From Macrostomum lignano (taxonomy: Eukaryota), in NCBI GenBank assembly GCA_002269645.1, contig NIVC01003025.1, positions 67,500 through 99,196 of the forward strand: 31,697 nucleotides of DNA. The letters run 5' to 3'. This document shows, piece by piece, positions 4,569 through 31,697 of the stretch; the stretch's first letter is position 1, and every line of letters begins with the position of its first letter. The position numbers and the translations under genes are program-made. The notes beneath the pieces are model-generated. The model was not told the origin of the DNA. It saw only the letters and a program-made list of their open reading frames with translations, and did no database searches.

Positions 4569-4641
4569 CTTAGGGATTAAAATTTATGAGGTACACCCGT
4601 ACGAGTAAATCGATCCCAAAACATTGTAAAAAACACATTAC

Positions 4642-5580
4642 CGAGTTCCTGCAGCGGTTAGCAATCTGAAACTGGGCCTGCACCTCGCGACGAAAGACGC
4701 CAGATCTAGTCAGGTGCACCCAGAGGTTGGCGGCACCACACAGTAACTGCGGCAGTCGAGCAAGACTGCTGTAGGCAGATCGCTCACTTTTAGGCAGTGC
4801 GACAATGTATAAGAGACCGACTCTGGTGACCACCTGAGTGCAGAACACCAGGCTGCCAACAATCACAACGCTGCGCACGCTGTCCAGAAGCTCCTGGGAG
4901 GAGACCGCCGCCCCACGGGTCATCAGCCAGATTCGGACGGCGCAAGCCCCGCTGAGAATCATGGCCAAAAAACTGTACACAATAGTCGATACCAGGTTCC
5001 ACATGGTGTACTCATCCCCAGAGACCTCCACGATGGTGCACATGGTAGTGATCCTGTTCGGATTTTCCAGCGTGAGTGACAGGGCCGTCACGTCCGCCAC
5101 AGCGCACAACCAGGCGACGGGCACCACAGGCCACGGGTAGGCGGCCCGCTTCCGGCTGTACCGGTGCGGAACGAGCACAGCGAATGCTCGGTCGAAGCAG
5201 GTGGCCGCAGTAAAAATGATGGAGCCGACGATGCCCAGCATCAGAGGAACAACGTCTAGCAGACATTCGCGTTCTGTCCGGAGGTTTCCGAGGCCGACCA
5301 GGTCGTCATGACAACGCCTTATAGTCACGTAGATGTAGCCGATCGCCAGAAATGCGTCCGCGACGGCGAGGTTCGCCACCAGGATGTAGAAGGACTTTGC
5401 GCGCAGCAAGTTGGATTTCGAGACGGCGTAGATGGTGAGCGAGTTGGCGCACAGAGACGCGAGGGCGGCCACCAACTGTACGCTGTTCACGGCCCTGTTG
5501 TTCCTGTAGCGCAAGACACTTTCATCGATCAGTTCCTGTAGCTGGGAGTCATCGATTGTTGCGTTGTTAGCGAACTCCAT
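4642..5580 (-). CDS. Class A (rhodopsin-like) orphan GPCR, main coding exon (313 codons); proposed CDS join(5580..4642,4568..4488), 339 aa
   Basis: Seven hydrophobic segments, N-terminal NAT sequon, TM2 NLAVAD, TM3 CFDRAF (DRY variant), TM4 Trp, Cys in TM3 and ECL2, TM7 AANLWVH, helix-8 FRRE. The first ATG is at 5580 (the ORF track starts at a TTG). An acceptor-like TTTTGCTTGCAAG lies 10 nt upstream of the ATG. Confidence 0.9.
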
Positions 5581-6068
5581 TGATAGCAGACTTGCAAGCA
5601 AATTTTGCTCAGTAGTATCTTATTCAAATTTTCGTTTGTGATAACTAAGAAAGACTCCTTGACTTTTATCTGACAAGCCTGTGGTTTCTCCACCAATCAG
5701 TGCACTTCAAAGCAGTATGGGCTTTGGATAGCCCATGTTGGAAGTTCCAACAGGTACTGATGGTTCCTCTTCAATGCTCACACAAGAACGAATTAAGTAG
5801 TTCTAGTGGTCGCATAGCCAAGACTGATGATATCCGAGCTACGTGCAAAGTGATAGGGTGCATCAGTTCTCTTTTTACTAGTTCGAGCCTATGTCCGATT
5901 GCAAGCAGGCTCAATGAGTCTTGAATCTGAAAAAAACAAGTCCATACCAAGTACCGCAAGCAGCAGCACTAGTATAATGGGAACAAGATTGTCAAAATTT
6001 AGATCTAGAACAGAAAGAAGCAATAAAACGTTGCTTGTTTTAATGTATCAAATTTTGGAGACCCGTTA

Positions 6069-6727
6069 ATCCAAGAGGCATCTGATGCATGAGACCTGCT
6101 ATTCGTGAGGCAACTGATGCATGAGGCCTGCTATCCATGAGGCATCTGATGCATGAGGCCTGCTATCCATGATGCATCTGATGCATGAGGCCTGCGATCC
6201 ATGAGGCATCTGATGCATGAGGCCTGCTATCCATGATGCATCTGATGCATGAGGCCTGCGATCCATGAGGCATCTGATGCATGAGGCCTGCTATTCGTGA
6301 GGCAACTGATGCATGAGGCCTGCTATTCGTGAGGCAACTGATGCATGAGGCCTGCGATCCATGAGGCATCTGATGCATGAGACCTGCTATTCGTGAGGCA
6401 TCTGATGCATGAGACCTGCTATTCGTGAGGCATCTGATGCATGAGACCTGCTATCCGTGAGGCATCTGATGCGTGAGGCCTGCTATTCGTGAAGCATCTG
6501 ATGCATGAGGCCTGCTATCCGTGAGGCATCTGATGCGTGAGGCCTGCTATTCGTGAGGCATCTGATGCATGAGGCCTGCTATCCGTGAGGCATCTGATGC
6601 GTGAGGCCTGCTATCCGTGAGGCATCTGATGCGTGAGGCCTGCTATTCGTGAGGCATCTGATGCATGAGGCCTGCTATCCGTGAGGCATCTGATGCGTGA
6701 GGCCTGCCTATCCGTGGGGCATCTGAT
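6069..6727. repeat. 32-bp minisatellite, ~20.6 copies, between the two GPCR genes
   Basis: Consensus ATCCATGAGGCATCTGATGCATGAGGCCTGCT; period 32 (ATGAGGCCTG at 6121 and 6153). Confidence 0.97.
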
Positions 6728-6974: not shown

Positions 6975-8033
6975 TCAGCAGTGAATCGACGCTTTGCGCT
7001 CACCGCGCACAGCCGCTCTCAAACAAGCGGCGGCTTCTGAACGCGCCCGAGGGCCCAACAGAGCGCAGATAAGAGCGTTTAAAGCGGAGTTCAGCGACAC
7101 GGCCAGATTGCCGCCTAGCAGCAGCAAGAGAGCCGCTAGCTCGGAGTCACCGCCGTCTTGACTCTGCAGCAAGAGTCGGGAGAACTCCCATAGCAGGACC
7201 GGAGCCTGGCATAGCAGGTAGATCAGGCTGTACAGCAGGGCCATTAGCGTGCACCGGCCGCCGCGGGACAGGCGTTCGTTGAACACGCGGGCTTCGGCCA
7301 GGCGGAGGCGTCGCCGGCTTCGCCTCAAACGCCGGACGGTGGCTCCGACAAGAAGCAGGTTGAACAGTAAGCAGAGACCCAGCGGACCGGCTAATCGAAA
7401 CACGTACAGCCAGACGTTCGAAAGGTACTCCGGGAGCAGGCCGTAGGTGTAGGTGACTCGAAGGCCAGCAGGGCAGTAGACAGTTCGCACCACCACCAGA
7501 CTGCGGGCAGCGGCAAGGCTGGCCACCAGGCAGAAGCTAGCAGCGATAAGGCCATTGGAGACTCGCCGACGCAGCCGACTCTGCTTGCCGGTTGACGCCG
7601 AGGCGACATCGACGGCTCGAGCGGCCACCAAAGCCACGGTGAGGCAGGACTGGGCGGAGTCCAGCCACACCTGCAGAGCGGAGATTGGAGCGTGCAGGTG
7701 GGCGATTGCAGCGTAGTAGCCAGAGCCTGGCAGCAGGCCGGGATAAGCGGTGACTACGTGCACGAGGCTGTCCAGCGAGTTGAACGCTTCGGCGGGCAGG
7801 CCGAGGCCGCACAGCCAGCCGGCGGCGAACCAGAACGGGCCGCTGCCACCGCGCAGAAGCAGCAGCCGCGTGGCCAGAAGATTCACCCCGCCGCCGCACA
7901 GCAGGCCGACCAACGCCTGCACCGCCAGAAGGGCCAGCGGCAGCGCGGACGACGAAGTATTGGCAGTAGTTTGAGGAGCATCTGCGTGCGAATTTGCCGT
8001 TGTGCAGGCGCTCTCGAACAATACGAGTGGCAT
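6975..8033 (-). CDS. Divergent single-exon class A GPCR, peptide-receptor-like (FMRFamide/myosuppressin/Srw-type motifs), 352 aa
   Basis: Intact ATG..TGA ORF with GC-rich codon use and 7 hydrophobic segments. TM5 GPLGLCLLFN, basic ICL3 RRLRRSRRR, TM6 LLCQAP (CxxP), TM7 LNSALNALIC (NSxxNxxI); the DRY position reads ARA. Confidence 0.85.
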   Translation of the reverse strand: MPLVLFESACTTANSHADAPQTTANTSSSALPLALLAVQALVGLLCGGGVNLLATRLLLLRGGSGPFWFAAGWLCGLGLPAEAFNSLDSLVHVVTAYPGLLPGSGYYAAIAHLHAPISALQVWLDSAQSCLTVALVAARAVDVASASTGKQSRLRRRVSNGLIAASFCLVASLAAARSLVVVRTVYCPAGLRVTYTYGLLPEYLSNVWLYVFRLAGPLGLCLLFNLLLVGATVRRLRRSRRRLRLAEARVFNERLSRGGRCTLMALLYSLIYLLCQAPVLLWEFSRLLLQSQDGGDSELAALLLLLGGNLAVSLNSALNALICALLGPRARSEAAACLRAAVRGERKASIHC

Positions 8034-13370: not shown

Positions 13371-15061
13371 GGTGGTGGTCGATTCCATGACTGACAATTA
13401 CAAGGAGGGGTCACTAATATTTCAATATATTTCTGTAGATCATTTCCATTGTATACTAGAAGTTTTTGGCATAAGATTTGTTAGTAGGGCTTTTTTGCTA
13501 AAGGAAGCATATAAGAATAGGCCTATAATTCACATGGCCATGCCTATGTGCTATAGTAGAGTTTCCTAGGCTATAAAATGCTTGGAGAAAAAATAAACTT
13601 TATTTAGACTTTTAAAATGATGCTATATAGGCCAAAACAATCCCAACTAGATACATTGCTATAAATAGCATTTTGGCTAAGAATAACATGATATAATATT
13701 ACCATATAATGATATCTAAGCCTTTTTGCTACAATTTTTTACAATATATTTTAGAAAAACTGCATATATGGTTGATTTATAATTGGGGTCAAGACCAAAG
13801 TGTTCAGTTATAGCCTAATTCACTTTTAAAATAATACCAAATGCAATTAAAGCAGACTACACTGCTACAGACTTAGATTAAAATAATTTATAAAATATTC
13901 TAGACAAAAATATTTCAAAAAGTGTTAAATTGCTTAAATATTTGTTTTTTAGTTCTAATTTTATTTAAGTAACTGTCATCATTATTGATATAAATTATTG
14001 TGCTTTATAAAGCCCTTTAAATTTTATCAAACATTATCATGTATATTGCTTTAGCCATATTAGCAAATGTTTTGCATGTTCAAAGGACCTATATAAATGC
14101 CTTTTTCCTGACTATGGACCTATTCTGCTTCAAGCTCATAGCCAATAGATTCCTAGACTAAGACTAGTAGCTAAGGTTTGTTAAACAGATAAAAAAATTA
14201 TACAAGTACTAAATTATAAGTATGACTATTAGGTAGGCATATAAATTACTTTGCATTCTTCCCTATACACAGATAAGTTCAAAGGCTATAATATAAAGCT
14301 AGCAAAGAAGAATATATGATTAAGTTATTTTCATTTATATAAAAAACTTACATTTTCTCTAATTATACAATATCATTGTATTATCTATATCCATCTATAA
14401 TTTAATTTGTTGTATATTCTACTCTATCCATGTCTCTACTCTTTAATTGTTATTAAGATTTAAGGTTCCTTTTATGAATATTGAGCTTAATCTTGGCTAA
14501 GGTCTATGGCTACATTTTTTTAATTTTTTAACTGAAAGACAACCTTTAGCCAAAATATATATTTATTCATCAAAATTTTCTTAAATTATTTCAACAATAA
14601 CCTTTCTGATAATAGACAAATATAATATTAATAATTGGTAGTCGTTTCATTTTCATTTTTTGTTGCATTGATTGGGATCAATGTGATTATAAGCAAAAAA
14701 TATTTGGCCCCTAGGTAGGCCTATACAAAAATAAAATAATAAGTTATAGGACAAATTAGAATTAGCTTCTAATTTTTGTATCAAATTAGATAATAACAAG
14801 GCCTAAGCTTAGTATTATTGTCTGTAAATAAATAGAAGAAGAAAAACAATTTATATAACTTTAATAATATTAATAAAGTTACTTTATGAGTGTTATTATC
14901 ATTAATCTATAAAAAGTAAATTACCATCATTGTGTAAGTATTGATATTATACTAAGAAATGTGACTTTAGCACACCTCACTATTTGGTAGGATAGGAACC
15001 CAATCCCAAAATGCTAGGATCTCACCTAGCAAAAATTTGGGATCCCAATCTCAAAATACCA

Positions 15062-16074
15062 GATCCCAGCAAAAATGTGGAATCCTAATCATAAACTGCC
15101 AGGATCCCAGCAAAAATGTGGAATCCTAATCATAAACTGCCAGGATCCCAGCAAAAATGTGGAATCCCAATCATGAACTGCCAGGATCCCAGCAAAAATG
15201 TGGGATCCCAATCATGAGCTGCCAGGATCCAAGCAAAAATGTGGGATCCCAATCATGAACTGCCAGGATCCCAGCAAAAATGTGGAATCCCAATCATGAA
15301 CTGCCAGGATCCCAGCAAAAATGTGGGATCCCAATCATGAACTGCCAGGATCCCAGCAAAAATGTGGAATCCCAATCATGAACTGCCAGGATCCCAGCAA
15401 AAATGTGGAATCCCAATCATGAGCTGCCAGGATCCAAGCAAAAATGTGGGATCCCAATCATGAACTGCCAGGATCCCATCAAAAATGTGGGATCCCAATC
15501 ATGAGCTGCCAGGATCCAAGCAAAAATGTGGGATCCCGATCATGAACTGCCAGGATCCAAGCAAAAATGTGGGATCCCGATCATGAACTGCCAGGATCCA
15601 AGCAAAAATGTGGGATCCCGATCATGAACTGCCAGGATCCCATAAAAAATGTGGGATCCCAATCATGAGCTGCCAGGATCCAAGCAAAAATGTGGGATCC
15701 CGATCATGAACTGCCAGGATCCCATCAAAAATGTGGGATCCCAATCATGAGCTGCCAGGATCCAAGCAAAAATGTGGGATCCCGATCATGAACTGCCAGG
15801 ATCCAAGCAAAAATGTGGGATCCCGATCATGAACTGCCAGGATCCCATAAAAAATGTGGGATCCCAATCATGAGCTGCCAGGATCCAAGCAAAAATGTGG
15901 GATCCCAATCATGAGCTGCCAGGATCCAAGCAAAAATGAGGGTTCCCAATCATGAGCTGCCAGGATCCAAGCAAAAATGTGGGATCCCAATCATGAGCTG
16001 CCAGGATCCAAGCAAAAATGTGGGATCCCAATCATGAACTGCCAGGATCCAAGCAAAAATGTGGGATCCCGATC
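15062..16074. repeat. 41-bp minisatellite, ~24.7 copies, with degenerate lead-in from ~14990
   Basis: Consensus GATCCCAGCAAAAATGTGG(G/A)ATCCCAATCATGA(A/G)CTGCCAG; period 41 (15062, 15103, ...). Two GATCCCA half-units per monomer. Confidence 0.97.
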
Positions 16075-16242
16075 CTGAAATGCTAGGCGATCACATTTAA
16101 CCAGCGTCAAATCAGTCACTACTCACCTTTTGTTTTAAAAAATTTAATTATAATCAAGCATATGTTATATGTTTTTATAAAATTCCAGCTAAACTATTGT
16201 TAAACCATAACTTATTAATTATTCTATGCATGCAACGCGGCA

Positions 16243-16671
16243 ATGTCTTTTGCTTGCTCTGTTAAGACTGCTACTATAACCCGCTGCCTCCTGCTTAGCA
16301 GCCAAAGATGGCTGTCTGTCGTTAACGCTGGCAGCCAATCTGCAATGAAGTCATTGCGACCAGTCTTTTCTATGCCAGCAACAGCTGGAGCAACAGGCGT
16401 GACGCGTTGCTTGCACACACAGCCGTTTGATCAGCAGCGGCCTTTGATCTGCTACAACTGCCGCAAGCCCGGCCACCTGGCCAAGGATTGTCCGTCTGGC
16501 GTTATATGCCACAACTGCGGACAGGAGGGCCACCTGTCCAGAGACTGCAAGTCGCTGCCGCGGTGTCACAACTGCGGCCAGGAGGGCCACTTGGCTAAGA
16601 ATTGTCCGTCGCCTGTGAAATGTCGCATCTGTGGCCAAGAGGGTCACTTGGCCGCCAACTGTCCGGGCTGA
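16243..16671 (+). CDS. Small CCHC zinc-knuckle protein (4 x CX2CX4HX4C; CNBP/GIS2/UMSBP-like) with a putative mitochondrial presequence, 142 aa
   Basis: Intact ORF with knuckles CYNCRKPGHLAKDC, CHNCGQEGHLSRDC, CHNCGQEGHLAKNC and CRICGQEGHLAANC, joined by 5-aa linkers. The first 62 residues lack D/E and contain RCLHT. AATAAA follows ~105 nt after the stop. Confidence 0.9.
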   Translation: MSFACSVKTATITRCLLLSSQRWLSVVNAGSQSAMKSLRPVFSMPATAGATGVTRCLHTQPFDQQRPLICYNCRKPGHLAKDCPSGVICHNCGQEGHLSRDCKSLPRCHNCGQEGHLAKNCPSPVKCRICGQEGHLAANCPG

Positions 16672-16775
16672 TGCAGCGTTTGTGTCCTTAAGGTTTCAAA
16701 ATTAATTCAATGAAGTTCAAAATCAATTAGAAGTTTCGAGCAGTTTTAAAGAGTAGTTCGTTTTAGTTTTTTGTT

Positions 16776-16781
16776 AATAAA
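16776..16781 (+). promoter_or_regulatory. Probable polyadenylation signal of the zinc-knuckle gene
   Basis: AATAAA 105 nt after TGA 16671, followed by T-rich tracts (~16820-16857). Confidence 0.6.
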
Positions 16782-17284
16782 AAATGCACTTTGAAGAACT
16801 AGATTGCATAACTAGCGATTGCATTTTTGTAAATCTTTGCTGCCTTTTTCTTTTTTGACTATACACTGTATACAGTATACCCAGTTAGGCAGTGTTAAGC
16901 GTCTTCGGTCTGATTTTGTGCTGTTTCCAGTTTGATTCCTAAGTGAGTGCTTCTTCCATTCTGAAGGAGTGCTGTTTCTATTCTGATTCTTGATTCAGAG
17001 TGCTTTTTCCACCCCGAGGGAGCGCTGTTTCTGTTATATCTTTAATACCTGAGGCAGTAGTGTTCAATTGCAGGAGTGAGAAAAGTGCTCGCTTGAGAGC
17101 TAGGCTGACAATATTTATTAGTTAGCAATGAGCTGGTGGGTGCATGCAGACAGATACAAGCGCACATTGGGTGGAGGTTAAATACAAAACCATAACTATC
17201 ATTCAATAACTATCGCCACTGCTAGTGAGTCAACAATTCAGTGCATGCAACTTATTGCAAAGTTCACCGCGTCACCATGTCACA

Positions 17285-17604
17285 GTTTCCATCCTGAGTG
17301 AGTGCTGTTTCCATCCTGAGTGAGTGCTGTTTCCATCCTGAGTCAGTGCTGTTTCCATCCCGAGGAAGTGCTGTTTCCATCCCGAGGAAGTGCTGTTTCC
17401 ATCCCGAGGAAGTGCTGTTTCCATCCTGAGGAAGTGCTGTTTCCATCCCGAGGAAGTGCTGTTTCCATCCCGAGGAAGTGCTGTTTCCATCCCGAGGAAG
17501 TGTTGTTTCCATCCCGAGTGAGTGCTGTTTCCATCCTGAGTCAGTGCTGTTTCCATCCCGAGGAAGTGTTGTTTCCATCCCGAGGGAGTGCTGTTTCCAT
17601 TCTG
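17285..17604. repeat. 22-bp minisatellite, ~14.5 copies, ending ~130 bp before the CEP19 ATG
   Basis: Unit GTGCTGTTTCCATCCCGAGGAA, with CCTGAG and GAGTGA variants. The overlapping ORFs in the track repeat every 22 aa (3 x 22 nt). Confidence 0.97.
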
Positions 17605-17736
17605 ATTTATTTTTTGAGTGAGTGCTGTTACCCTTCTAAGAGAGTGGGATTTGTCATTCTTAATCATCCTATGACTCCTACTGTAAGTAGGGTGTTAAGA
17701 AAGTCTACAATAGAACCGAAAACTGATTACTAATTC

Positions 17737-17940
17737 ATGTCTGGCGACGAGCTGTTAAAGTGCGGCCTGGTGTTCAAGCCGCCAACTCTGCTGTTGTTGT
17801 ACAGACGCGGTGGCCTGCTTGGCGTTGTGCGAAAACGCTCGGTACGCTTAGGCGCGCACCTGTCAGCGGCTGAGGCCGAGGCAAAGAATGGCGATGCCGG
17901 CGCTAATTCTACTGGAGCTATTGCTGAACGACTTAAACAG
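17737..17940 (+). CDS. CEP19: CEP19 (centrosomal protein 19 kDa) exon 1; CDS join(17737..17940,24779..24982,25386..25520), 180 aa
   Basis: KCGLVFKPPTLLLLY..RKR.V matches the CEP19 N-terminus (KCGIRFQPPAIILIY). Phase-0 donor CAG|GTGAGT at 17941; in-frame TAA just upstream of the ATG. Confidence 0.92.
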
Positions 17941-18289
17941 GTGAGTTAAGTCTCATTAACTATGCCTGAAATATTTAAACCTGATACTCTGTTATCGTTT
18001 TTAGAATAGCTTTTTGTCCAGGCCCATCAACAGAAAAATCCCTACAATAACTTTCAAGTTATAAAAAAGTAGACGATTGTTTCGAGATTTGTCTTGTCCG
18101 AGAGTAAGACTTAACTCGAATAGACAAATAGACGAAAGTTTACACGTTAATCCCGAAATTATTTGTAGCAAAAGTTTACTCACTGGCGCACATGTTACTG
18201 TTACTCACATTATATGTAATCTTGGGCTGAATCAGTCCACTTCATTAATCATGAGATTGCTATAAAAATATAAATCCAATCGTCACTTG

Positions 18290-19047
18290 TAGAATAGATA
18301 GATAGATAAAGAAAAGCAAAAAAACTCGAGTTCTTGCGCGCACGCGTCGCGAAAGAGACGCGAAGGGCAAGCAGCTGCGGTCTGAGGGCTGAGGGCTGAG
18401 CCTGAAAGTCAGACACGAAACAGTCACTCAGCGTCACAGTACGCCTTTGGCGTGGCTGGTGCAGGCTAGGAGCATTGCCAACGGGACTTGGTCGCTGCGG
18501 CCGAGACTCCGGAGGCAGTGGCTCACCAGAATCCGCCCCTTGTACGTAAGATAAAGACGTTCCTGAGCAGGTGCGCCGCGCGCCAGGCCTGATTCCTCCT
18601 GTCGGAGACGATGAAGTCCGGACTCTTGCTAGAATGGAATGACGCAGTACGTAATCCACGACCATGATGAAGAGCAGGGGAGCCAGCGTGTCGCCATGCA
18701 GGACGCCGAAGGTTGTGCTGAATTCCTCAGTGGGGCACTGGGGCCCTTGCTCGTTTGAACAAACGCTCTGGAATCATTGTACAGGTCCATCACTCCAGCT
18801 ACCAGTGCAGACGGAACGCCGTAGTAGGACAGCAACCACGCGATCGCAAGCCTGAGCACCAAGTCGAACGCCTTACGGAAGTCCACGAAGACGATCGACA
18901 CGGCGCGTTGGCAGGTCTTTTAAGGCCTCGATGACGGCGCGGATAGTCGCAACCTGCTTTGTGTTGGAGCTGGAGGAAGATTCTAGTTGAGGCCAGGCAA
19001 GAGGCGGTTGCGGATCACTGCATTGGCAGCTTCGCCATGGCGCACTG
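18290..19047 (-). mobile_element. 5'-truncated, internally deleted RTE-type non-LTR retrotransposon (LINE) in CEP19 intron 1
   Basis: AKL.NAVIRNRL, QVATIRAVIE, SIVFVDFRKAFD..LLSYYGVP, GVLHGDTLAPLLFIMVVDYVLR and a C-terminal SHCLR segment. The 3' end carries a (TATC)n tail at ~18290-18311. Confidence 0.85.
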
Positions 19048-19063
19048 ATCCAAATCGCACTAG

Positions 19064-19700
19064 TCGAAGGCGCCTATCTTTCGAGGCGAAAAACTTGATT
19101 GTCTCTTCAACGTCGATATCCACGATTTTATAGATTGACATCAATGCCAATCCACTAAGACTTTCCTCGCCTGTCGTCGCCCTTGAATATTTCTTCAGGT
19201 ACTTCATTGCGGAAAACGTTCTCTCAGCTGTTGCCGTTGAGACGGGCAAAGTATAAAAAATCTAAAGTGCCAAATAGATGCTAGATAAAAGGCTGGCTTG
19301 CAGCTGTCCAATACATCACTAACGTTGTGCGGGCAATCAGAAATGTTCTTGGTCATCTAGAATCTCTGCCACACCGCAAACTCATGGTGAAAGTCTTCAA
19401 GTGCAACAGCTGGCAAAAATTGGTGGCTTTGATACCCTTTGAGGGTAGCAGAAAGCTCAGCAAATTTAACGGACTCAGCATCGCACACAAAAAATGGAAG
19501 CAAGTTGCTGAGCTGAGCTATGGCTCCAGTTTGCTGGTATTAAACAGATCATCAAGCGTCCCAATGAGGCTAAGCTCGAAGGAACAAAAATAGTTACATT
19601 GATGAAGTGCTCAGCTATGATCTGTTGATCGTGTGCTAGCTGGTCCCTCTGATAACATGCACGGGGGAGCTGGTCGACTTTTAGGGATCCTCGCAGCTCG
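19064..19700 (-). mobile_element. hAT transposase C-terminal (dimerisation domain) remnant
   Basis: TLPVSTATAERTFSAMKYLKKYSRATTGEESLSGLALMSI..IDVEETIKFFA..RRL. Upstream fragments HEFAVWQ..CPHNVSDVLDSC and PRACYQR..AEHFINV, with stops and frameshifts. Confidence 0.85.
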
Positions 19701-22124: not shown

Positions 22125-24700
22125 TCAACTCGGCACCTCTGGATAAACAGTGTTCGTAGTTTATCCGCCAATAACCTTCCCGAACGTTGACAGCGTCTTT
22201 GGCTCGAGACAATGCCGTATATACTCGTAGTCGGCCATGCGTAAATCAACCCCAACGGTCAGATGAACTCCGTCAGCGACTGACCCTGAGCCTTGTGAAT
22301 ATTAAGGCAGAAACTGGGCCTCACTGAAAACTGTAGCGTAGCCGCTTGAAGGTTATGGGCACGTCGGTGTTTGTGGGGCTCAAAGGAATGCGTGGCAACA
22401 ATAGTTGTTCACCGTTGTATTGTCTGGCTACTTCTTGGCACCGCAAGGTGTCGCTATGTCTAGCAGTTTTTGCCGTGTGCCGTTGTAGAGCCTGGGCGGG
22501 TTAAAGTTGCGCATCAGCACCAGTGGCATGTCCACCTTGAAGCGCATCCGATGCTTTGGCAAGTTCGGCACTTCCAGGCTGTTTAAAACTTCCGGGAGAA
22601 ACCGCGCGCGTGGCTTCGTTTTCGCTTGACGAACTGTCTGCGGACCGGTACTCCCGGGCCACTCCTGGAAGCGCCAGACAATCACCGTTGATTTTGTTGA
22701 CAATTTAGTTGTAAGGAGCCAGTATAGCCCGAGTGGCAAAGTAGGCATTCCTCTCCTAGGGCTGGTTAAAAGACTGGCACACGGCTCAAATAAGATGTTC
22801 CGTCGAGTTATCTGATGGTAGAATGATGTCTGATGATAGGGCTATGTAGCCAGTACTGTCTTCAGGGGTGCAACCTGAACCAACCTGAAATTTATTACGA
22901 AAACTCGGTGCTACCAAAGATAGTTGATATTAAAGTTTTTTAAGTTTTAAGTTTGTTTAGTTATGTCGCAAAAAGTATTAATGTGATTTAACCACTTTTT
23001 GTAAATTTTGTTCGACAGGCGCCTAAAGACTGCAAAAAAACGAAATCCAGCTATTACGGCACATTCCCGCAAATCATCTTAAGAGAAAAAAAGAAAACCA
23101 ATCAGAAGAATAAACTTTGCGTATTGCTGACGCAGTTCTGCGTCCGGGCCTCCAGCTTGCGGAATGTTTTTTTCGACGGGTTAGGGTTAGCGCACGCCAT
23201 CACGCTGTTTGCCCGTGTCCTATGCTGCACCACCAGCAAAACCTGGCGGAAGTCGAAGAGGGATTGATGCTCTCGGATATCCCGTAGACTCTGATCAACG
23301 GCTTCCAGGTCTCTTCGGTCCGTGATAGTGATAATGTAGATACTTCGTCCCATACAATCAAACGGGTTTGACGAGATGTGCAGCTTGCCTGGACTGCACT
23401 CGCACGGAACAGACGTCAGAGTGTCCGTGTGCATCTATCTCTAAACCGGGCTTTGAACCTGAGCAAACAATTTTTATTTATTTATTGAATGTATTACTTT
23501 TTTGCTTAGAAGAATGGAAATAGAAAGCAAGTTTCATAAAACAAAAACTAAATATATTGCGACGTAATTTAGAAATGCAGCTGCTTAAAAATGAAGCAGT
23601 TTTATTTCTTTTGTAATAACAAAATAATATAGTAAACGTAATAATGAAATGAAAATAACTCGCGTTGAGTGCGCAGTCTGCCCGCTAGGCAACAGGGTGG
23701 AAACAATATCCGAGAAAGCTATGACGTGAGCGACTTCACCGCGACTGCGAACAAAAGCCAGTAGTACCTCCAATATAAAGTTTTTCCAGTAGCAGGAGCA
23801 TCTACGAAGTGCAATCCGCCGTAGTCACTTCTGATGTCATTTAAGCAATGAAGCGCGATCATTACATTTCTGCCTGTTCTTGCATTAAATTGCAGCGGCG
23901 CAAGCTGGGGCAGAGAAAAGGCTTCGGCAGGTCATAGTCGCTCAAAGTGCGATCACTCATAGAAGTTGACAGCACTTGGAGCTCACGAACCGCGAGGTCT
24001 TCTATCTCCTCGATGCTGAAATCTGGGGGAAACGGAGGTCCTTGCACAAGTCGTCTGCAAACTCGCGTCAAAGTTTCTGACCATCGTGCGGTCACCCCAA
24101 ATGACAAAATAAGATGACGCAACACATTCGGCATACGTGACAGAGCGGCCTCTTCAGGCAGAACTGCCAGTGGTTTTCATGCTGAAGCAGACCTTGGGCT
24201 TGGCAAGCAGCCTTAAATGTGTAAAAAACACTGTCTGTAGTAAGCAATGCTTCATAGCCAGTAGGACCTTTCACGTGAAGCAGCAGCATTTGCATATAGA
24301 ATTTTTTTTTTGTTGTTCAGCTTTAGATTAAAAAAATAAGTACAGACTTGTAAGTTTTTTAAAGCTTTAGTTGTTTTTTATTGTTGCAAACGAATAGTCT
24401 TTCAAAAAAACTATAGGCTTTTTAAGGTGAAAAAAGCAAAATAAAAAATTGCTTAGCACAAATGAACGAAAAAATAGGAACAAACGTTTTTTTGTTTCAC
24501 ACAAAATTGTTCCAGTACAATCATATTTGAAAAAAAGGAAACGCATTTTGCAGTTTTGCTGCGCGTGAGTTTCTTCTTAATTCGTGAGTCGCCATGTCGC
24601 CGCTCTTTAGTAGATATTTAACGACGTACTTGACCGAATGCACACTGGCGCTTACTTCGATATTAAAATTAGCAGGCGAACTTAATTATCAAAGAATATA
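22125..24700 (-). mobile_element. Decayed Helitron RepHel (end of Rep plus Pif1-type helicase), with introns, antisense in CEP19 intron 1
   Basis: Ordered motifs: NIEVSASVHSVKYVVKYLLKSGD; FYMQMLLLHVKGPTGY..TFKAAC..GLL; FVDAPATGKT; LLPSGQTAHS|TFK; IVWDE; EAVDQSLRDI..DFRQ; RAILAPYN; LNSL..LP.H..K..P.VLMRNFNPPRLYNGTR; LPRIPLSP; IHKAQGQSL; HGRL.VYTALSR; TNTVYPEV. Confidence 0.93.
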
Positions 24701-24778
24701 CTAACTTTTCATGCAATCTTTTAAAAAGTCAGCAAACAATATTTGGTTACAATTAACAAATCTAAATTGTCTCTGCAG

Positions 24779-24982
24779 GACAAGCGACACGGCGATCTCA
24801 TCTGTCAGCTCAGCCAGCTGCAGCTCGAACGCCTGCTGTCCATCCTGCGCGATGTGACAGTGAACGGCCTCAGCAAAGAGCAGAGTCTGGATAAACAGCG
24901 CCAGATGGAGCAAATCGATCCGCTAGAGGATCCTAACAAAGTTGACGAGGAGACACTGCAGAGGAAGAAGGCTGCCATGCAG
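24779..24982 (+). CDS. CEP19: CEP19 exon 2
   Basis: TGTCTCTGCAG|GAC acceptor; RH..QLSQLQLERLL..L...IDPLEDPNKVDEETLQRKKAAM matches the CEP19 core (IDPEEDLNKLDDKEL..RKSIM); CAG|GTGCGG donor, phase 0. Confidence 0.93.
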
Positions 24983-25017
24983 GTGCGGCAACTGGGTCTT
25001 CGTAATTGGGTTTTTTG

Positions 25018-27920: not shown

Positions 27921-28391
27921 ATGTCCTCTTCGTCTTCGCCAAAGCGACCGCGCCTGCGGCTGGAGCTGCCACCGTCCGCCAGTTGCTCCGCTTTTGACAC
28001 CTTCAGGAGCGGCGGCGGCAACCTCGCCATCTCCCGCCAGCGCTCCGAGCAGGCGCCGCCATCGGCTGCTACGCCGGCCCGCCGGCTGTGGCTCTGCCCT
28101 GACGACGATCTCGGCAGGCAGGCGGCGGACAGAGCGTCCGAAGAGCGAAGCCAGTTATGGACTGACAGGTACGGACCGGCTAGCACAGAGGAGCTCTGCT
28201 TGCACAAGAAAAAATTGCTAGAATTGGAGGCCTGTCTGAGCTGCAGGCCTCGGCTGGTCTTCGTGCACGGCCCGTGCGGAGCGGGCAAGTCCGTTGCTGT
28301 GCGGCTGCTGTGCGACCGCCTGCGGCTGGGCTCGGCTTACCTGGATGAGGAGCTGGACGCCTGCGCTAACGGCCCGGCCGAGGCCATGCAG
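27921..28391 (+). CDS. RAD17: RAD17 checkpoint clamp loader, exon 1; model join(27921..28391,28690..28944,29573..29951,30305..30725), ~509 aa if four single-base gaps are restored
   Basis: WTDRYGPASTEELCLHKKKLLEL (Rad17 WxxKY.P..EL.VHKKK), Walker A GPCGAGKS, phase-0 donor CAG|GTGAGA. Confidence 0.92.
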
Positions 28392-28517
28392 GTGAGAGGA
28401 GCACAGGCCTCGTATAATCAGTGCTGAGGCGTTTCTAGCCGGCGTGGGTGTTGCTGTCAGTGTCCGTGTGGATTATTCTCCTGTTATCTCTTCTCTCCCT
28501 GTAATAGCCTCTTATCT

Positions 28518-28971: not shown

Positions 28972-29545
28972 TAGATTTGAAGTCTCGAGTATGGGATGTG
29001 TCAGATCTGAAGTCTCACCTTGAGTATGGGATGTGTCAGATCTGAAGTCTCACTTTGAGTATGGGATGTGTCAGATCTGAAGTCTCACCTTGAGTATGGG
29101 ATGTGTCAGATCTGAAGTCTCACTTTGAGTATGGGATGTGTCAGATCTGAAGTCTCACCTTGAGTATGGGATGTGTCAGATCTGAAGTCTCACTTTGAGT
29201 ATGGGATGTGTCAGATCTGAAGTCTCACCTTGAGTATGGGATGTGTCAGATCTGAAGTCTCACCTTGAGTATGGGATGTGTCAGATCTGAAGTCTCACTT
29301 TGAGTATGGGATGTGTCAGATCTGAAGTCTCACCTTGAGTATGGGATGTGTCAGATCTGAAGTCCCACTTGAGTATGGGATGTGTCAGATCTGAAGTCTC
29401 GTCTTCAGTATGGGATGTGTCAGATCTGAAGTCTCATTCTGAGTATGGAATGTGTCAGATCTGAAGTCTCATCTTGAGTATGGGATGTGTCAGATCTGAA
29501 GTCTCGTCCTAAGTATGGAATGTGTCAGATCTGAAGTCTCGTCTT
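28972..29545. repeat. 35-bp minisatellite, ~16.4 copies, filling RAD17 intron 2
   Basis: Unit TGAGTATGGGATGTGTCAGATCTGAAGTCTCAC(C/T)T; period 35 (29021, 29056, ...). Confidence 0.97.
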
Positions 29546-29996: not shown

Positions 29997-30222
29997 TTAT
30001 AGCGGCTCTTGGCCTAGGGACCGGGGTCTAGCCACAGGTATACAGCAGCTTCTGGCATAGGGACCGGGGTCTAGCCACAGGTATACAGCAGCTTCTGGCA
30101 TAGGGACCGGGGTCTAGCCACAGGTATACAGCAGCTTCTGGCATAGGGACCGGGGTCTAGCCACAGGTATACAGCAGCTTCTGGCATAGGGACCGGGGTC
30201 TAGCCACAGGATACAGCGGCTT
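29997..30222. repeat. 43-bp minisatellite, ~5 copies, in RAD17 intron 3
   Basis: Unit TAGGGACCGGGGTCTAGCCACAGGTATACAGCAGCTTCTGGCA at 30015, 30058, 30101, 30144 and 30187. Confidence 0.96.
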
Positions 30223-31013: not shown

Positions 31014-31697
31014 ATTGAGCTCGTGGCTCGTTGCCTCAACTGCCTCATCAGTCTGAGCAGTCAGCTGATTGAGCTCCTGTTCTCAACTGCCTCATCAGTC
31101 TGAGCAGTCAGCTGATTGAGCTCCTGTGCATTCTCAACTGCCTCATCAGTCTGAGCAGTCAGCTGATTGAGCTCCTGCATTCTCAACTGCCTCATCAGTC
31201 TGAGCAGTCAGCTGATTGAGCTCCTGTGTTCTCAACTGCCTCATCAGTCTGAGCAGTCAGCTGATTGAGCTGCTGCATTCTCAACTGCCTCATCAGTCTG
31301 AGCAGTCAGCTGATTGAGCTGCTGCATTCTCAACTGCCTCATCAGTCTGAGCAGTCACTGATTGAGCTGCCTGCATTCTCAACTGCCTCATCAGTCTGAG
31401 CAGTCAGCTGATTGAGCTCCTGCATTCTCAACTGCCTCATCAGTCTGAGCAGTCAGCTGATTGAGCTCCTGCGTTCTCAACTGCCTCATCAGTCTGAGCA
31501 GTCAGCTGATTGAGCTCCTGCTTCTCAACTGCCTCATCAGTCTGAGCAGCAGCTGATTGAGCTCCTGCTGCATTCTCAACTGCCTCATCAGTCTGAGCAG
31601 TCAGCTGATTGAGCTCCTGCATCTCAACTGCCTCATCAGTCTGAGCAGTTATGATTGAGCTGCTGCATTCTCAACTGCCTCATCAGTCTGAGCAGTC
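31014..31697. repeat. ~49-bp minisatellite, ~14 copies, running off the window end, with many small indels
   Basis: Consensus TTCTCAACTGCCTCATCAGTCTGAGCAGTCAGCTGATTGAGCTCCTGCA; unit length varies ~46-52 bp. Confidence 0.96.

What the first reader, a model, noticed from the sequence alone, without database searches (positions are those of the whole stretch)
16243..16671. Apparent mitochondrially targeted, knuckle-only nucleic-acid-binding protein
Seen: 62 N-terminal residues with no Asp or Glu, six Arg/Lys, many Ser/Thr/Ala/Leu, and R-C-L-H-T at 55-59 resembling an MPP cleavage site. The rest is four near-identical CCHC knuckles, with no RGG box. Established: animal CNBP and fungal Gis2 act in the cytosol and nucleus on single-stranded nucleic acid, whereas kinetoplastid UMSBP binds kinetoplast DNA replication origins. 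Inference: a lineage-specific CNBP-like paralog relocated to mitochondria, where it could act on mtDNA origins, G-rich strands or mt-RNA processing. I know of no described animal equivalent. This is the best candidate for new biology in the window.
Basis: partly seen in the sequence, partly recalled or inferred. Interest (0 to 1): 0.72.

Follow-up and report, generated by a model that had tools for sequence, protein, structure and literature searches.

The report
Flatworm zinc-knuckle protein with presequence-like tail
This is a real, trans-spliced gene of the flatworm Macrostomum lignano encoding a small four-zinc-knuckle nucleic-acid-binding protein; its unusual acid-free N-terminal extension looks like a mitochondrial import signal, but that localisation is still only a plausible guess.

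Summary
ORF 16243-16671 (+) encodes 142 aa. Residues 1-62 have no Asp/Glu and six Lys/Arg, followed by four CCHC knuckles and no RGG box.

The window is the end of Macrostomum lignano contig NIVC01003025.1. The gene is annotated there, and two further syntenic copies exist.

In those copies the annotated 5' end follows a consensus spliced-leader acceptor (TTGCAG), 10 nt upstream of ATG 16243. In the window those bases read TGCATG, the 3' end of the spliced leader. This is probably an RNA-seq polishing artefact, which itself points to leader-carrying reads at this junction. ATG 16243 is therefore very likely in the mRNA. The leader's own AUG is out of frame.

The knuckles are saturated at synonymous sites but conserved in protein, so they are old and constrained.

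The extension has no homologue among 1.84 billion representative proteins and no GC3 bias. Its amphipathic-helix signal is weak, and 1.5-4% of random open frames match its composition. No localisation predictor was available.

I put mitochondrial import at about 0.45. The main alternative is a cytosolic or nuclear knuckle protein with a disordered tail. Similar presequence-like extensions occur on knuckle proteins of fungi and uncharacterised eukaryotes.

The parts
16183..16188 (+). TTCCAG, a second sequence matching the M. lignano trans-splice acceptor motif [T/C]TNCAG, conserved in all three copies. Possible alternative acceptor; no evidence that it is used.
   Evidence: motif from PMC8629364.
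16227..16232 (+). Position of the spliced-leader acceptor. It reads TGCATG in the window but TTGCAG in the two other copies. The window version equals the last six bases of the spliced leader (...TTGCATG), so it is probably an RNA-seq (Pilon) polishing imprint rather than true genomic sequence.
   Evidence: The same pattern occurs at the CEP19 5' end. Pilon polishing with RNA-seq is stated in PMC5730564.
16233..16242 (+). 10-nt 5' UTR between the trans-splice junction and the start codon (CAACGCGGCA). The annotated 5'-partial CDS (NAA-M...) begins at 16234.
   Evidence: P0121 is the window's own annotated product. TBONE cuts transcripts at SL-read peaks.
16243..16671 (+). Intronless CDS, 142 codons plus TGA.
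16243..16428 (+). Residues 1-62: acid-free, net charge +6, Ser/Thr/Ala/Leu-rich extension with no detectable homologue. Candidate mitochondrial presequence.
16306..16317 (+). R22-W-L|S25, the only match to the classical R-3 processing-peptidase motif RX(Y/F/L)|(S/A/T) in the extension.
   Evidence: The motif definition comes from general knowledge.
16405..16419 (+). It fits only the loose R-2 pattern.
16450..16491 (+). CCHC knuckle 1 (CYNCRKPGHLAKDC).
16507..16548 (+). CCHC knuckle 2 (CHNCGQEGHLSRDC).
16564..16605 (+). CCHC knuckle 3 (CHNCGQEGHLAKNC).
16621..16662 (+). CCHC knuckle 4 (CRICGQEGHLAANC).
16776..16781 (+). AATAAA, 105 nt after the stop codon, conserved in the other copies. Likely polyadenylation signal.
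   Evidence: The poly(A) site itself was not seen.

Best explanation
Shown, or nearly so: this is an expressed, intronless, spliced-leader trans-spliced gene of Macrostomum lignano. It has three copies in assembly Mlig_3_7. The mature mRNA is the 35-nt leader, then 10 nt, then AUG 16243. The leader's own AUG has a weak context and opens an out-of-frame 11-codon reading frame that overlaps the start. The product is a 15-kDa basic protein (pI about 9). Its C-terminal 77 residues are four CNBP/nucleocapsid-type CCHC zinc knuckles under purifying selection.

Inferred from family knowledge: the knuckles bind single-stranded, probably G-rich, DNA or RNA and act as a nucleic-acid chaperone.

Inferred from composition only (my probability about 0.45, still the single most likely reading): the acid-free, positively charged 62-residue extension is a matrix-targeting presequence. 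It would be cleaved somewhere between residues 24 and 57. That would deliver a knuckle-only protein to mitochondria, where it could act on mtDNA or mt-RNA.
For: Gene and expression:
- NCBI carries 5'-partial CDSs (NAAM...) for all three copies, PAA53772.1, PAA84841.1 and the window's own.
- In the two other copies the CDS begins right after TTGCAG. This matches the reported acceptor motif [T/C]TNCAG (PMC8629364).
- The annotation pipeline cuts 5' ends at peaks of leader-containing reads (PMC5730564).
- In the window, the leader's terminal bases are stamped onto the genome at this junction and also at the CEP19 junction. The assembly was polished with RNA-seq.

Knuckles:
- Pfam zf-CCHC E=1.3e-31.
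- Best solved relatives are Air2 (E=1.6e-11) and retroviral nucleocapsids.
- Between units, pS is 0.46-0.93 against pN 0.09-0.33.
- Across the three copies the knuckle region has 1 variable site in 222 nt. The 3' UTR varies at 4.7% and the upstream flank at 11%.

Presequence reading:
- No D/E in residues 1-62, six K/R, 47% S/T/A/L, an R-3 motif at 22-25 and two phi-x-x-phi-phi motifs.
- No hydrophobic stretch long enough for a signal peptide or membrane anchor; maximum Kyte-Doolittle mean over 19 residues is 1.08.
- The other two frames of the extension each hold 4 stops.
- AUG 16243 has G at -3 and is the first in-frame AUG.
- Comparable extensions precede knuckle arrays in unrelated eukaryotes, including P0007, P0011, P0004, P0016, P0019 and P0023.
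Against: - No validated localisation predictor could be run, and no experimental localisation exists.
- Basic residues are sparse for a presequence (4 Arg and 2 Lys in 62 residues).
- The best 18-residue hydrophobic moment, 0.51, is reached by 7% of shuffles.
- AlphaFold2 on the single sequence shows no helix in the extension, at very low confidence.
- GC3 of the extension is 0.49. It is 0.75 in the knuckles and 0.66-0.77 in other coding ORFs of the window. The extension may therefore be young or weakly constrained.
- An exhaustive search of 1.84 billion representatives found the extension only in M. lignano.
- 1.5-4% of random open frames share its composition.
- Two of the three variable sites in the extension among the copies are nonsynonymous.
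- CCHC proteins cannot be localised by analogy. Trypanosoma brucei UMSBP2 proved to be telomeric (PMC6125633). Crithidia UMSBP is mitochondrial without a typical presequence (PMC2192376).
Confidence: 0.45

Rival explanations
1. Same gene and same knuckle function, but the protein stays in the cytosol or nucleus, for example in RNP or germ granules. The N-terminal 69 residues are then a young, fast-evolving disordered tail with no targeting role.
For: The extension has no homologue and no GC3 bias. Its amphipathicity is weak and no structure is predicted. 1.5-4% of random open frames have the same composition. Characterised relatives (CNBP, Gis2) are cytoplasmic or nuclear (PMC3528734). UMSBP2 is nuclear (PMC6125633).
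Against: A 62-residue run that is acid-free, net positive and hydroxyl-rich, placed directly before a domain that normally starts at the N terminus, is the classical appearance of a presequence. Random acid-free basic sequences often support import (general knowledge). The same architecture recurs in other eukaryotes.
Confidence: 0.38
2. The main product starts downstream. Ribosomes that initiate at the leader AUG read the 11-codon overlapping frame and re-initiate at Met35 or Met44. Alternatively, internal in-frame acceptors (exon starts 16351, 16423, 16435, 16438) let the leader AUG start a knuckle-only protein. Either route gives a shorter isoform or a second, cytosolic one.
For: The leader AUG precedes and overlaps ATG 16243 out of frame. 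In-frame AG sites exist; splicing at 16423 would give MPFDQQRPLICYNC.... Flatworm leader AUGs are used as initiators in some mRNAs (PMC9851317). The neighbouring CEP19 gene appears to do this.
Against: The annotated 5' end is at 16233 in all three copies, and none of the internal AG sites matches the acceptor motif. The leader AUG has U at -3 and C at +4, a weak context, while ATG 16243 has G at -3. Products starting at Met35 or Met44 would still begin with an acid-free basic stretch.
Confidence: 0.1
3. A remnant or domesticated fragment of a retroelement Gag/ORF1 nucleocapsid, not a cellular CNBP-like gene.
For: Retroviral nucleocapsids and Gag are among the best solved matches. Transposon debris lies nearby: a hAT dimerisation fragment at 18983-19249 (-) and a Pif1/Helitron-like fragment at 22428-22748 (-).
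Against: There are four evenly spaced knuckles. No capsid, protease or reverse-transcriptase coding lies on the same strand next to it. The three copies are syntenic with conserved flanks rather than dispersed. The gene has its own trans-splice acceptor and AATAAA. The best protein hits are short multi-knuckle cellular proteins named CNBP or HEXBP.
Confidence: 0.04
4. A chance ORF or an untranslated transcript.
For: It is short, and the extension has no homologue.
Against: Four perfect knuckles are kept despite saturated synonymous divergence. The CDS is far more conserved than its flanks. Knuckle GC3 is typical of coding sequence. There is transcript-based annotation in three copies.
Confidence: 0.02

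Closest known systems
CNBP/ZNF9 (animals), Gis2 (yeast), Leishmania HEXBP: cellular multi-knuckle single-strand nucleic-acid-binding proteins
   Same: Tandem C-X2-C-X4-H-X4-C knuckles with a G-x-x-G-H core and short linkers, in a small basic protein with no other domain. The best named database hits carry these names, at 34-47% identity over the knuckles.
   Different: It has four knuckles, not seven (or nine in HEXBP). It has no RGG box. A 69-residue extension precedes the first knuckle, where CNBP and Gis2 start with a knuckle. Knuckles 2-4 have His or Arg where CNBP has an aromatic residue after the first Cys (the CNBP side is from memory). Orthology was not demonstrable.
UMSBP of trypanosomatids (CCHC protein binding the G-rich universal minicircle sequence at kinetoplast DNA origins)
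   Same: A knuckle-only small protein. It is the one characterised case of this protein type working inside a mitochondrion (PMC2192376, PMC2615610).
   Different: UMSBP has five knuckles and no typical N-terminal targeting sequence (PMC2192376). Here there are four knuckles and a long presequence-like extension. There is no evidence of common descent beyond the knuckle motif. One UMSBP paralogue is nuclear and telomeric (PMC6125633).
Uncharacterised eukaryotic proteins with a presequence-like extension plus a CCHC array: P0007 (Logan run SRR30445392, compact fungus-like contig), P0011, P0004/P0023/P0016, and P0019 (Moniliophthora roreri ESK88204.1)
   Same: The architecture matches. P0007 has a 65-residue extension with 1 acidic and 8 basic residues, an 'RPL' just before the first Cys, knuckles with 5-aa linkers and a total length of 151 aa. 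It is 45% identical over 101 aa.
   Different: The extensions do not align with each other or with this one. None has a known localisation. Most come from unnamed metagenomic or read-archive assemblies. They may be convergent.
Air2 / retroviral nucleocapsid zinc knuckles (solved structures 2LLI, 1AAF, 1A1T and others)
   Same: They are the closest sequences with a solved structure (E=1.6e-11 to 2e-08). This supports the knuckle fold and single-strand RNA/DNA binding.
   Different: Those knuckles sit inside larger proteins or polyproteins with other roles (the TRAMP complex, genome packaging).

Membership tests
zf-CCHC zinc knuckle (Pfam PF00098) | C-X2-C-X4-H-X4-C spacing with the Gly/His core, scoring above the Pfam gathering threshold | tested here: met
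   107.6 bits against a cut-off of 20.8, four stretches. Four exact regex matches.
CNBP/Gis2 | Seven tandem knuckles | tested here: not met
   Four knuckles only.
CNBP/Gis2 | RGG box between knuckles 1 and 2 (animal CNBP) | tested here: not met
   No RGG anywhere. The linker between knuckles 1 and 2 is PSGVI.
CNBP/Gis2 | Protein begins with the first knuckle, with no N-terminal extension | tested here: not met
   The first Cys is at residue 70.
CNBP/Gis2 | Orthology (reciprocal best match or phylogeny with animal CNBP) | tested here: inconclusive
   The top hits are fungal or environmental multi-knuckle proteins, some named CNBP or HEXBP. No animal CNBP was among the listed hits. The short repetitive domain gives no resolution.
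CNBP/Gis2 and UMSBP | Binding of G-rich single-stranded DNA/RNA | not testable with these tools
   Needs EMSA or CLIP with recombinant protein.
UMSBP | Five knuckles and intramitochondrial localisation at mtDNA origins | tested here: not met
   The knuckle number is four. Localisation is not testable here.
Mitochondrial matrix-targeting presequence | N-terminal stretch free of acidic residues, net positive, rich in Ser/Thr/Ala/Leu | tested here: met
   0 D/E, 6 K/R and 47% S/T/A/L in residues 1-62. This composition occurs in 1.5-4% of random open frames.
Mitochondrial matrix-targeting presequence | Capacity to form a positively charged amphipathic helix | tested here: inconclusive
   Maximum hydrophobic moment 0.51 (18-residue window, residues 22-39), reached by 7% of shuffles. 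AlphaFold2 gives coil at pLDDT about 30.
Mitochondrial matrix-targeting presequence | Processing-peptidase motif (R-2, R-3 or R-10) | tested here: met
   R-3 at R22-W-L|S, an R-10-like pattern at R14, and R-2 patterns at R14, R22, R39 and R55. These are low-information motifs, so this is weak evidence.
Mitochondrial matrix-targeting presequence | Positive call by trained predictors (TargetP, MitoFates, DeepLoc) or experimental import | not testable with these tools
Mitochondrial matrix-targeting presequence | Extension retained, acid-free, in orthologues | tested here: inconclusive
   Only the M. lignano copies were found. They keep it acid-free, with changes I12T and S31N. Controls for whether related Macrostomum species are in the database failed.
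SL trans-spliced gene of M. lignano | Acceptor motif [T/C]TNCAG immediately before the annotated 5' end, with leader-bearing reads at the junction | tested here: met
   TTGCAG|C in L001 and L003, with the CDS starting at the next codon. The leader's 3' bases are imprinted in the window copy. The reads themselves were not seen.
Retroelement Gag/ORF1 nucleocapsid | Knuckles joined to capsid and followed by protease/RT on the same strand, with dispersed copies | tested here: not met
   No such ORFs lie on the + strand next to it. The copies are syntenic.

The most novel reading that the evidence does not exclude
A metazoan has a nuclear-encoded, knuckle-only CCHC protein that is imported into mitochondria through a lineage-specific presequence. 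There it would serve as a single-strand (G/T-rich) mtDNA or mt-RNA chaperone or origin-binding factor. This would be an animal counterpart of kinetoplastid UMSBP that arose independently. It might be one instance of a recurrent but undescribed eukaryotic class of presequence-bearing knuckle proteins. A bolder addition, at about 0.05 probability, is that alternative spliced-leader acceptors with an in-frame leader AUG produce a second, cytosolic knuckle-only isoform.
Probability: 0.4. Interest if true: 0.6.

Novelty: new variant of a known kind. Interest (0 to 1): 0.4.

Why it matters
As far as I know and as far as my literature searches went, no animal mitochondrial proteome has a described CCHC zinc-knuckle protein. 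Outside kinetoplastids, no knuckle-only protein has been tied to mtDNA or mt-RNA.

If this protein is imported, it adds a new type of nucleic-acid chaperone to animal mitochondrial gene expression or replication. M. lignano has transgenesis and RNAi, so the question can be answered directly.

The recurrence of presequence-like extensions on knuckle arrays in fungi and environmental eukaryotes hints at a wider unstudied class.

If the protein is not imported, this is one more small lineage-specific RNA-binding protein and is ordinary.

[quoted passage not shown] This matters to anyone calling start codons or splice sites in that genome.

Tried and rejected
1. I looked for orthologues that keep the extension.
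- The full-length search found only the M. lignano cluster plus generic knuckle proteins.
- An exhaustive search of 1.84 billion representatives with residues 1-69 found only P0001 and a spurious translated tandem repeat, P0123.

2. I ran two control searches to learn whether related Macrostomum species are in the protein collection. One used the GPCR ORF and one a CEP19 exon. Both returned nothing, not even self-hits.

3. I searched for the gene identifiers Mlig027223 and Mlig002438 in full texts and in the supplements of four M. lignano papers. There were no occurrences, so I have no expression class (germline, neoblast or other).

4. AlphaFold2 on the single sequence gave pLDDT 40 with the extension as coil. 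This is uninformative.

5. Cluster look-ups for the presequence-like homologues gave almost no names or taxa.

6. I first read the window's TGCATG as a real loss of the acceptor in a decaying copy, with two new upstream ATGs. I rejected this in favour of a polishing artefact, because the CEP19 junction shows the same overwriting by leader bases and the assembly was polished with RNA-seq.

7. Signal peptide or membrane anchor: rejected, no adequate hydrophobic stretch.

8. Retroelement Gag remnant: rejected on context.

9. Recent tandem duplication as the cause of knuckle similarity: rejected, synonymous sites are saturated.

10. Rfam and tRNA scans of the window found nothing. No copy of the spliced-leader sequence is in the window.

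Full report
**What is there**

The ORF at 16243-16671 (+) is real. It encodes 142 residues.

- Residues 1-62 contain no Asp or Glu.
- The basic residues in that stretch are K8, R14, R22, K36, R39 and R55.
- 29 of the 62 residues are Ser, Thr, Ala or Leu, and R-C-L-H-T is at 55-59.
- Residues 70-140 are four exact C-X2-C-X4-H-X4-C knuckles joined by 5-residue linkers, with no RGG box.
- Pfam zf-CCHC matches at E=1.3e-31.

**Where it comes from**

The best database match is a Macrostomum lignano protein, PAA53772.1 (BOX15_Mlig027223g1), at 99% identity.

The window is identical to the last 31.7 kb of contig NIVC01003025.1 of assembly Mlig_3_7, GCA_002269645.1. The window's own gene is annotated there as a 145-residue 5'-partial CDS starting 'NAAM' (P0121).

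Two further copies exist:
- L001, on the same contig in inverted orientation.
- L003, on NIVC01000359.1.

Both are syntenic with the window. Identity is about 98% downstream and about 90% upstream.

**Is ATG 16243 in the mRNA?**

In L001 and L003 the six bases before the annotated 5' end are TTGCAG, followed by CAACGCGGCA-ATG. This matches the acceptor motif [T/C]TNCAG reported for M. lignano spliced-leader trans-splicing (PMC8629364).

The annotation pipeline (TBONE) cuts transcripts at peaks of leader-containing reads (PMC5730564). A 5'-partial CDS that starts at the first full codon after an AG is what that procedure yields. Any longer transcript would have extended the open frame back to the in-frame TAA at 16216-16218.

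The window itself reads TGCATG at 16227-16232. The leader ends ...TTATTGCATG. The four bases that differ from the other copies are exactly the ones that turn the acceptor into the leader's 3' end.

The same thing happens at the next gene. At the CEP19 5' end, the other copies read TTGCAG|TCTGGC and the window reads TTCATG|TCTGGC.

Mlig_3_7 was polished with Pilon using RNA-seq mapped by STAR (PMC5730564 Methods). I therefore read both sites as polishing artefacts in which leader-bearing reads overwrote the genome. That is inference, and the raw DNA reads were not seen. It also counts as indirect evidence that leader-carrying transcripts end at 16232|16233.

The leader's own AUG is out of frame. 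It opens an 11-codon frame (MQRGNVFCLLC*) that overlaps the start. Its context is weak (U at -3, C at +4). ATG 16243 has G at -3.

An AATAAA lies 105 nt after the stop codon.

**Is it under selection?**

The four knuckle units differ heavily at synonymous sites (pS 0.46-0.93) but little at nonsynonymous sites (pN 0.09-0.33). Their similarity therefore reflects long-term purifying selection, not recent duplication.

Across the three copies:

| Region | Variable sites |
|---|---|
| Knuckle region | 1 in 222 nt |
| Extension plus 5' UTR | 3 in 217 nt (1 synonymous, 2 nonsynonymous: I12T, S31N) |
| 3' UTR | 4.7% |
| Upstream flank | 11% |

GC3 is 0.75 in the knuckles, like the other coding ORFs in the window (0.66-0.77). 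It is only 0.49 in the extension. Overall GC of the extension is 0.52, far above the flanking non-coding DNA (0.26-0.29).

The extension is open only in this frame; the other two frames each hold 4 stops.

I conclude that the knuckle array is old and constrained. The extension is translated but weakly constrained, possibly younger.

**The extension as a presequence**

In favour:
- The composition.
- Two phi-x-x-phi-phi motifs.
- No stretch hydrophobic enough for a signal peptide or membrane anchor.

Against, or neutral:
- Only four Arg in 62 residues.
- The maximum hydrophobic moment is not significant; 7% of shuffles reach it.
- AlphaFold2 shows no helix, at very low confidence.
- 1.5% of random open frames from window-like DNA have the same composition, rising to 4% when built from the extension's own dinucleotide content.
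- The extension has no homologue. An exhaustive HMMER search of 1.84 billion representative proteins with residues 1-69 returned only the M. lignano protein and a spurious repeat.

I could not establish whether other Macrostomum species are represented in the collections, because both control searches failed. The lack of orthologues therefore does not count either way.

No trained localisation predictor is available here.

**Parallels**

Among the knuckle-protein hits, several carry N-terminal extensions with 0-2 acidic and 5-8 basic residues:
- P0011: 64 residues, 0 D/E.
- P0007: 65 residues, 1 D/E.
- P0004, P0016, P0023.
- P0019, from the fungus Moniliophthora roreri.

P0007 resembles this protein most in overall build. 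It has 'RPL' before the first Cys, 5-residue linkers and a length of 151 aa, and is 45% identical over 101 residues. It lies on a compact fungus-like contig.

The extensions themselves do not align. None of these proteins has a known location. They show that the architecture recurs, not that it is mitochondrial.

My literature searches found no described mitochondrial knuckle-only protein outside kinetoplastids.
- UMSBP is intramitochondrial but lacks a typical presequence (PMC2192376).
- One paralogue, TbUMSBP2, is telomeric (PMC6125633).

**Mechanism and verdict**

The gene and its product's knuckle domain are solid. Binding of single-stranded nucleic acid follows from the family. The closest solved relatives are Air2 and the retroviral nucleocapsids.

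Mitochondrial import is the single most likely reading of the extension, at about 0.45. A cytosolic or nuclear protein with a disordered tail is nearly as likely, at about 0.38.

It is not a CNBP family member by CNBP's defining features (seven knuckles, RGG box, N-terminal knuckle). It may still work like one.

I rate it a new variant of a known kind, of moderate interest. It is cheaply testable, because M. lignano has transgenesis and RNAi (PMC5730564).

Noticed in passing
window 16227-16232 and 17734-17739 (compare L001 5994-5999 and 7297-7302; L003 7482-7487): At both annotated trans-splice junctions in the window, the AG acceptor seen in the other copies (TTGCAG) is replaced by the 3' end of the spliced leader (TGCATG and TTCATG). 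The assembly was polished with RNA-seq, so these look like leader 'imprints'. They create false genomic ATGs at 16226, 16230 and 17737.
   Followed up: partly
window 17737-17949 (+), and exon at about 24743-24997 (+): The downstream gene is CEP19 (Pfam PF14933, E=5.6e-10). Its annotated CDS is 5'-partial and starts directly after the acceptor (SGDELLK...). The leader AUG is in frame, so the initiator Met is apparently donated by the spliced leader. The ATG at 17737 in the window is the imprint, not genomic.
   Followed up: partly
window 16243-17739: The CCHC gene and CEP19 are on the same strand and both are trans-spliced. About 940 nt separate them (AATAAA region to the next acceptor), of which about 430 nt are tandem repeats. 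By the published repeat-adjusted criterion of less than 1 kb (PMC8629364) they would count as a two-gene operon.
   Followed up: partly
contig NIVC01003025.1: window copy (record 75733-92170, forward) and L001 (record 38340-50777, reverse): Two copies of the whole CCHC-CEP19 segment lie in inverted orientation on one contig. Upstream of the gene, L001 is 99.6% identical to the copy on another contig (L003) but only about 90% identical to the window. This could be a real inverted duplication or a chimeric join of homeologous copies.
   Followed up: no
window 15028-16087 and 17285-17600 (also 1-314, 6075-6727, 28987-29540, 30010-30222, 31035-31697): The gene is bracketed by minisatellites: a 41-bp unit in about 26 copies upstream and a 22-bp unit in about 14 copies downstream. 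The window as a whole is unusually rich in tandem arrays with periods of 22-49 bp. The long ORFs in 17264-17733 on both strands are translations of the 22-bp array.
   Followed up: no
window 16351-16647 (-) and 16224-16418 (-): Antisense ORFs of 98 and 64 aa overlap the CDS. They have no independent support and are most likely by-products of the coding strand's composition.
   Followed up: no
window 16267, 16351, 16423, 16435, 16438 (exon starts after AG): Five AG sites inside the N-terminal coding region would put the leader AUG in frame with the knuckles if used as acceptors. Splicing at 16423 would give MPFDQQRPLICYNC..., 83 aa. None matches the acceptor motif and there is no evidence of use.
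   Followed up: no
window 4570-5601 (-) and 6975-8033 (-): Two intronless 7TM receptor-like ORFs. The first matches the Srsx chemoreceptor family (E=5.6e-11). The second matches rhodopsin-type 7tm_1 only weakly (E=0.004, below threshold). The first found no homologue, not even itself, in the protein collection.
   Followed up: partly
window 27921-28427 (+): First exon of a Rad17-like checkpoint clamp-loader gene (Rad17 P-loop domain, E=1.7e-08). It is preceded by GACCAG|CATG, a possible acceptor immediately before the start codon.
   Followed up: no
window 18983-19249 (-), 22428-22748 (-), 18629-18901 (-): Transposon debris, apparently inside the CEP19 intron(s). It includes a hAT dimerisation-domain fragment (E=6.5e-06) and a Pif1 2B-domain (Helitron-like) fragment (E=2.3e-08). 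A third ORF carries an 'FVDFRKAFD' motif that recalls reverse transcriptase, but it has no Pfam hit.
   Followed up: partly
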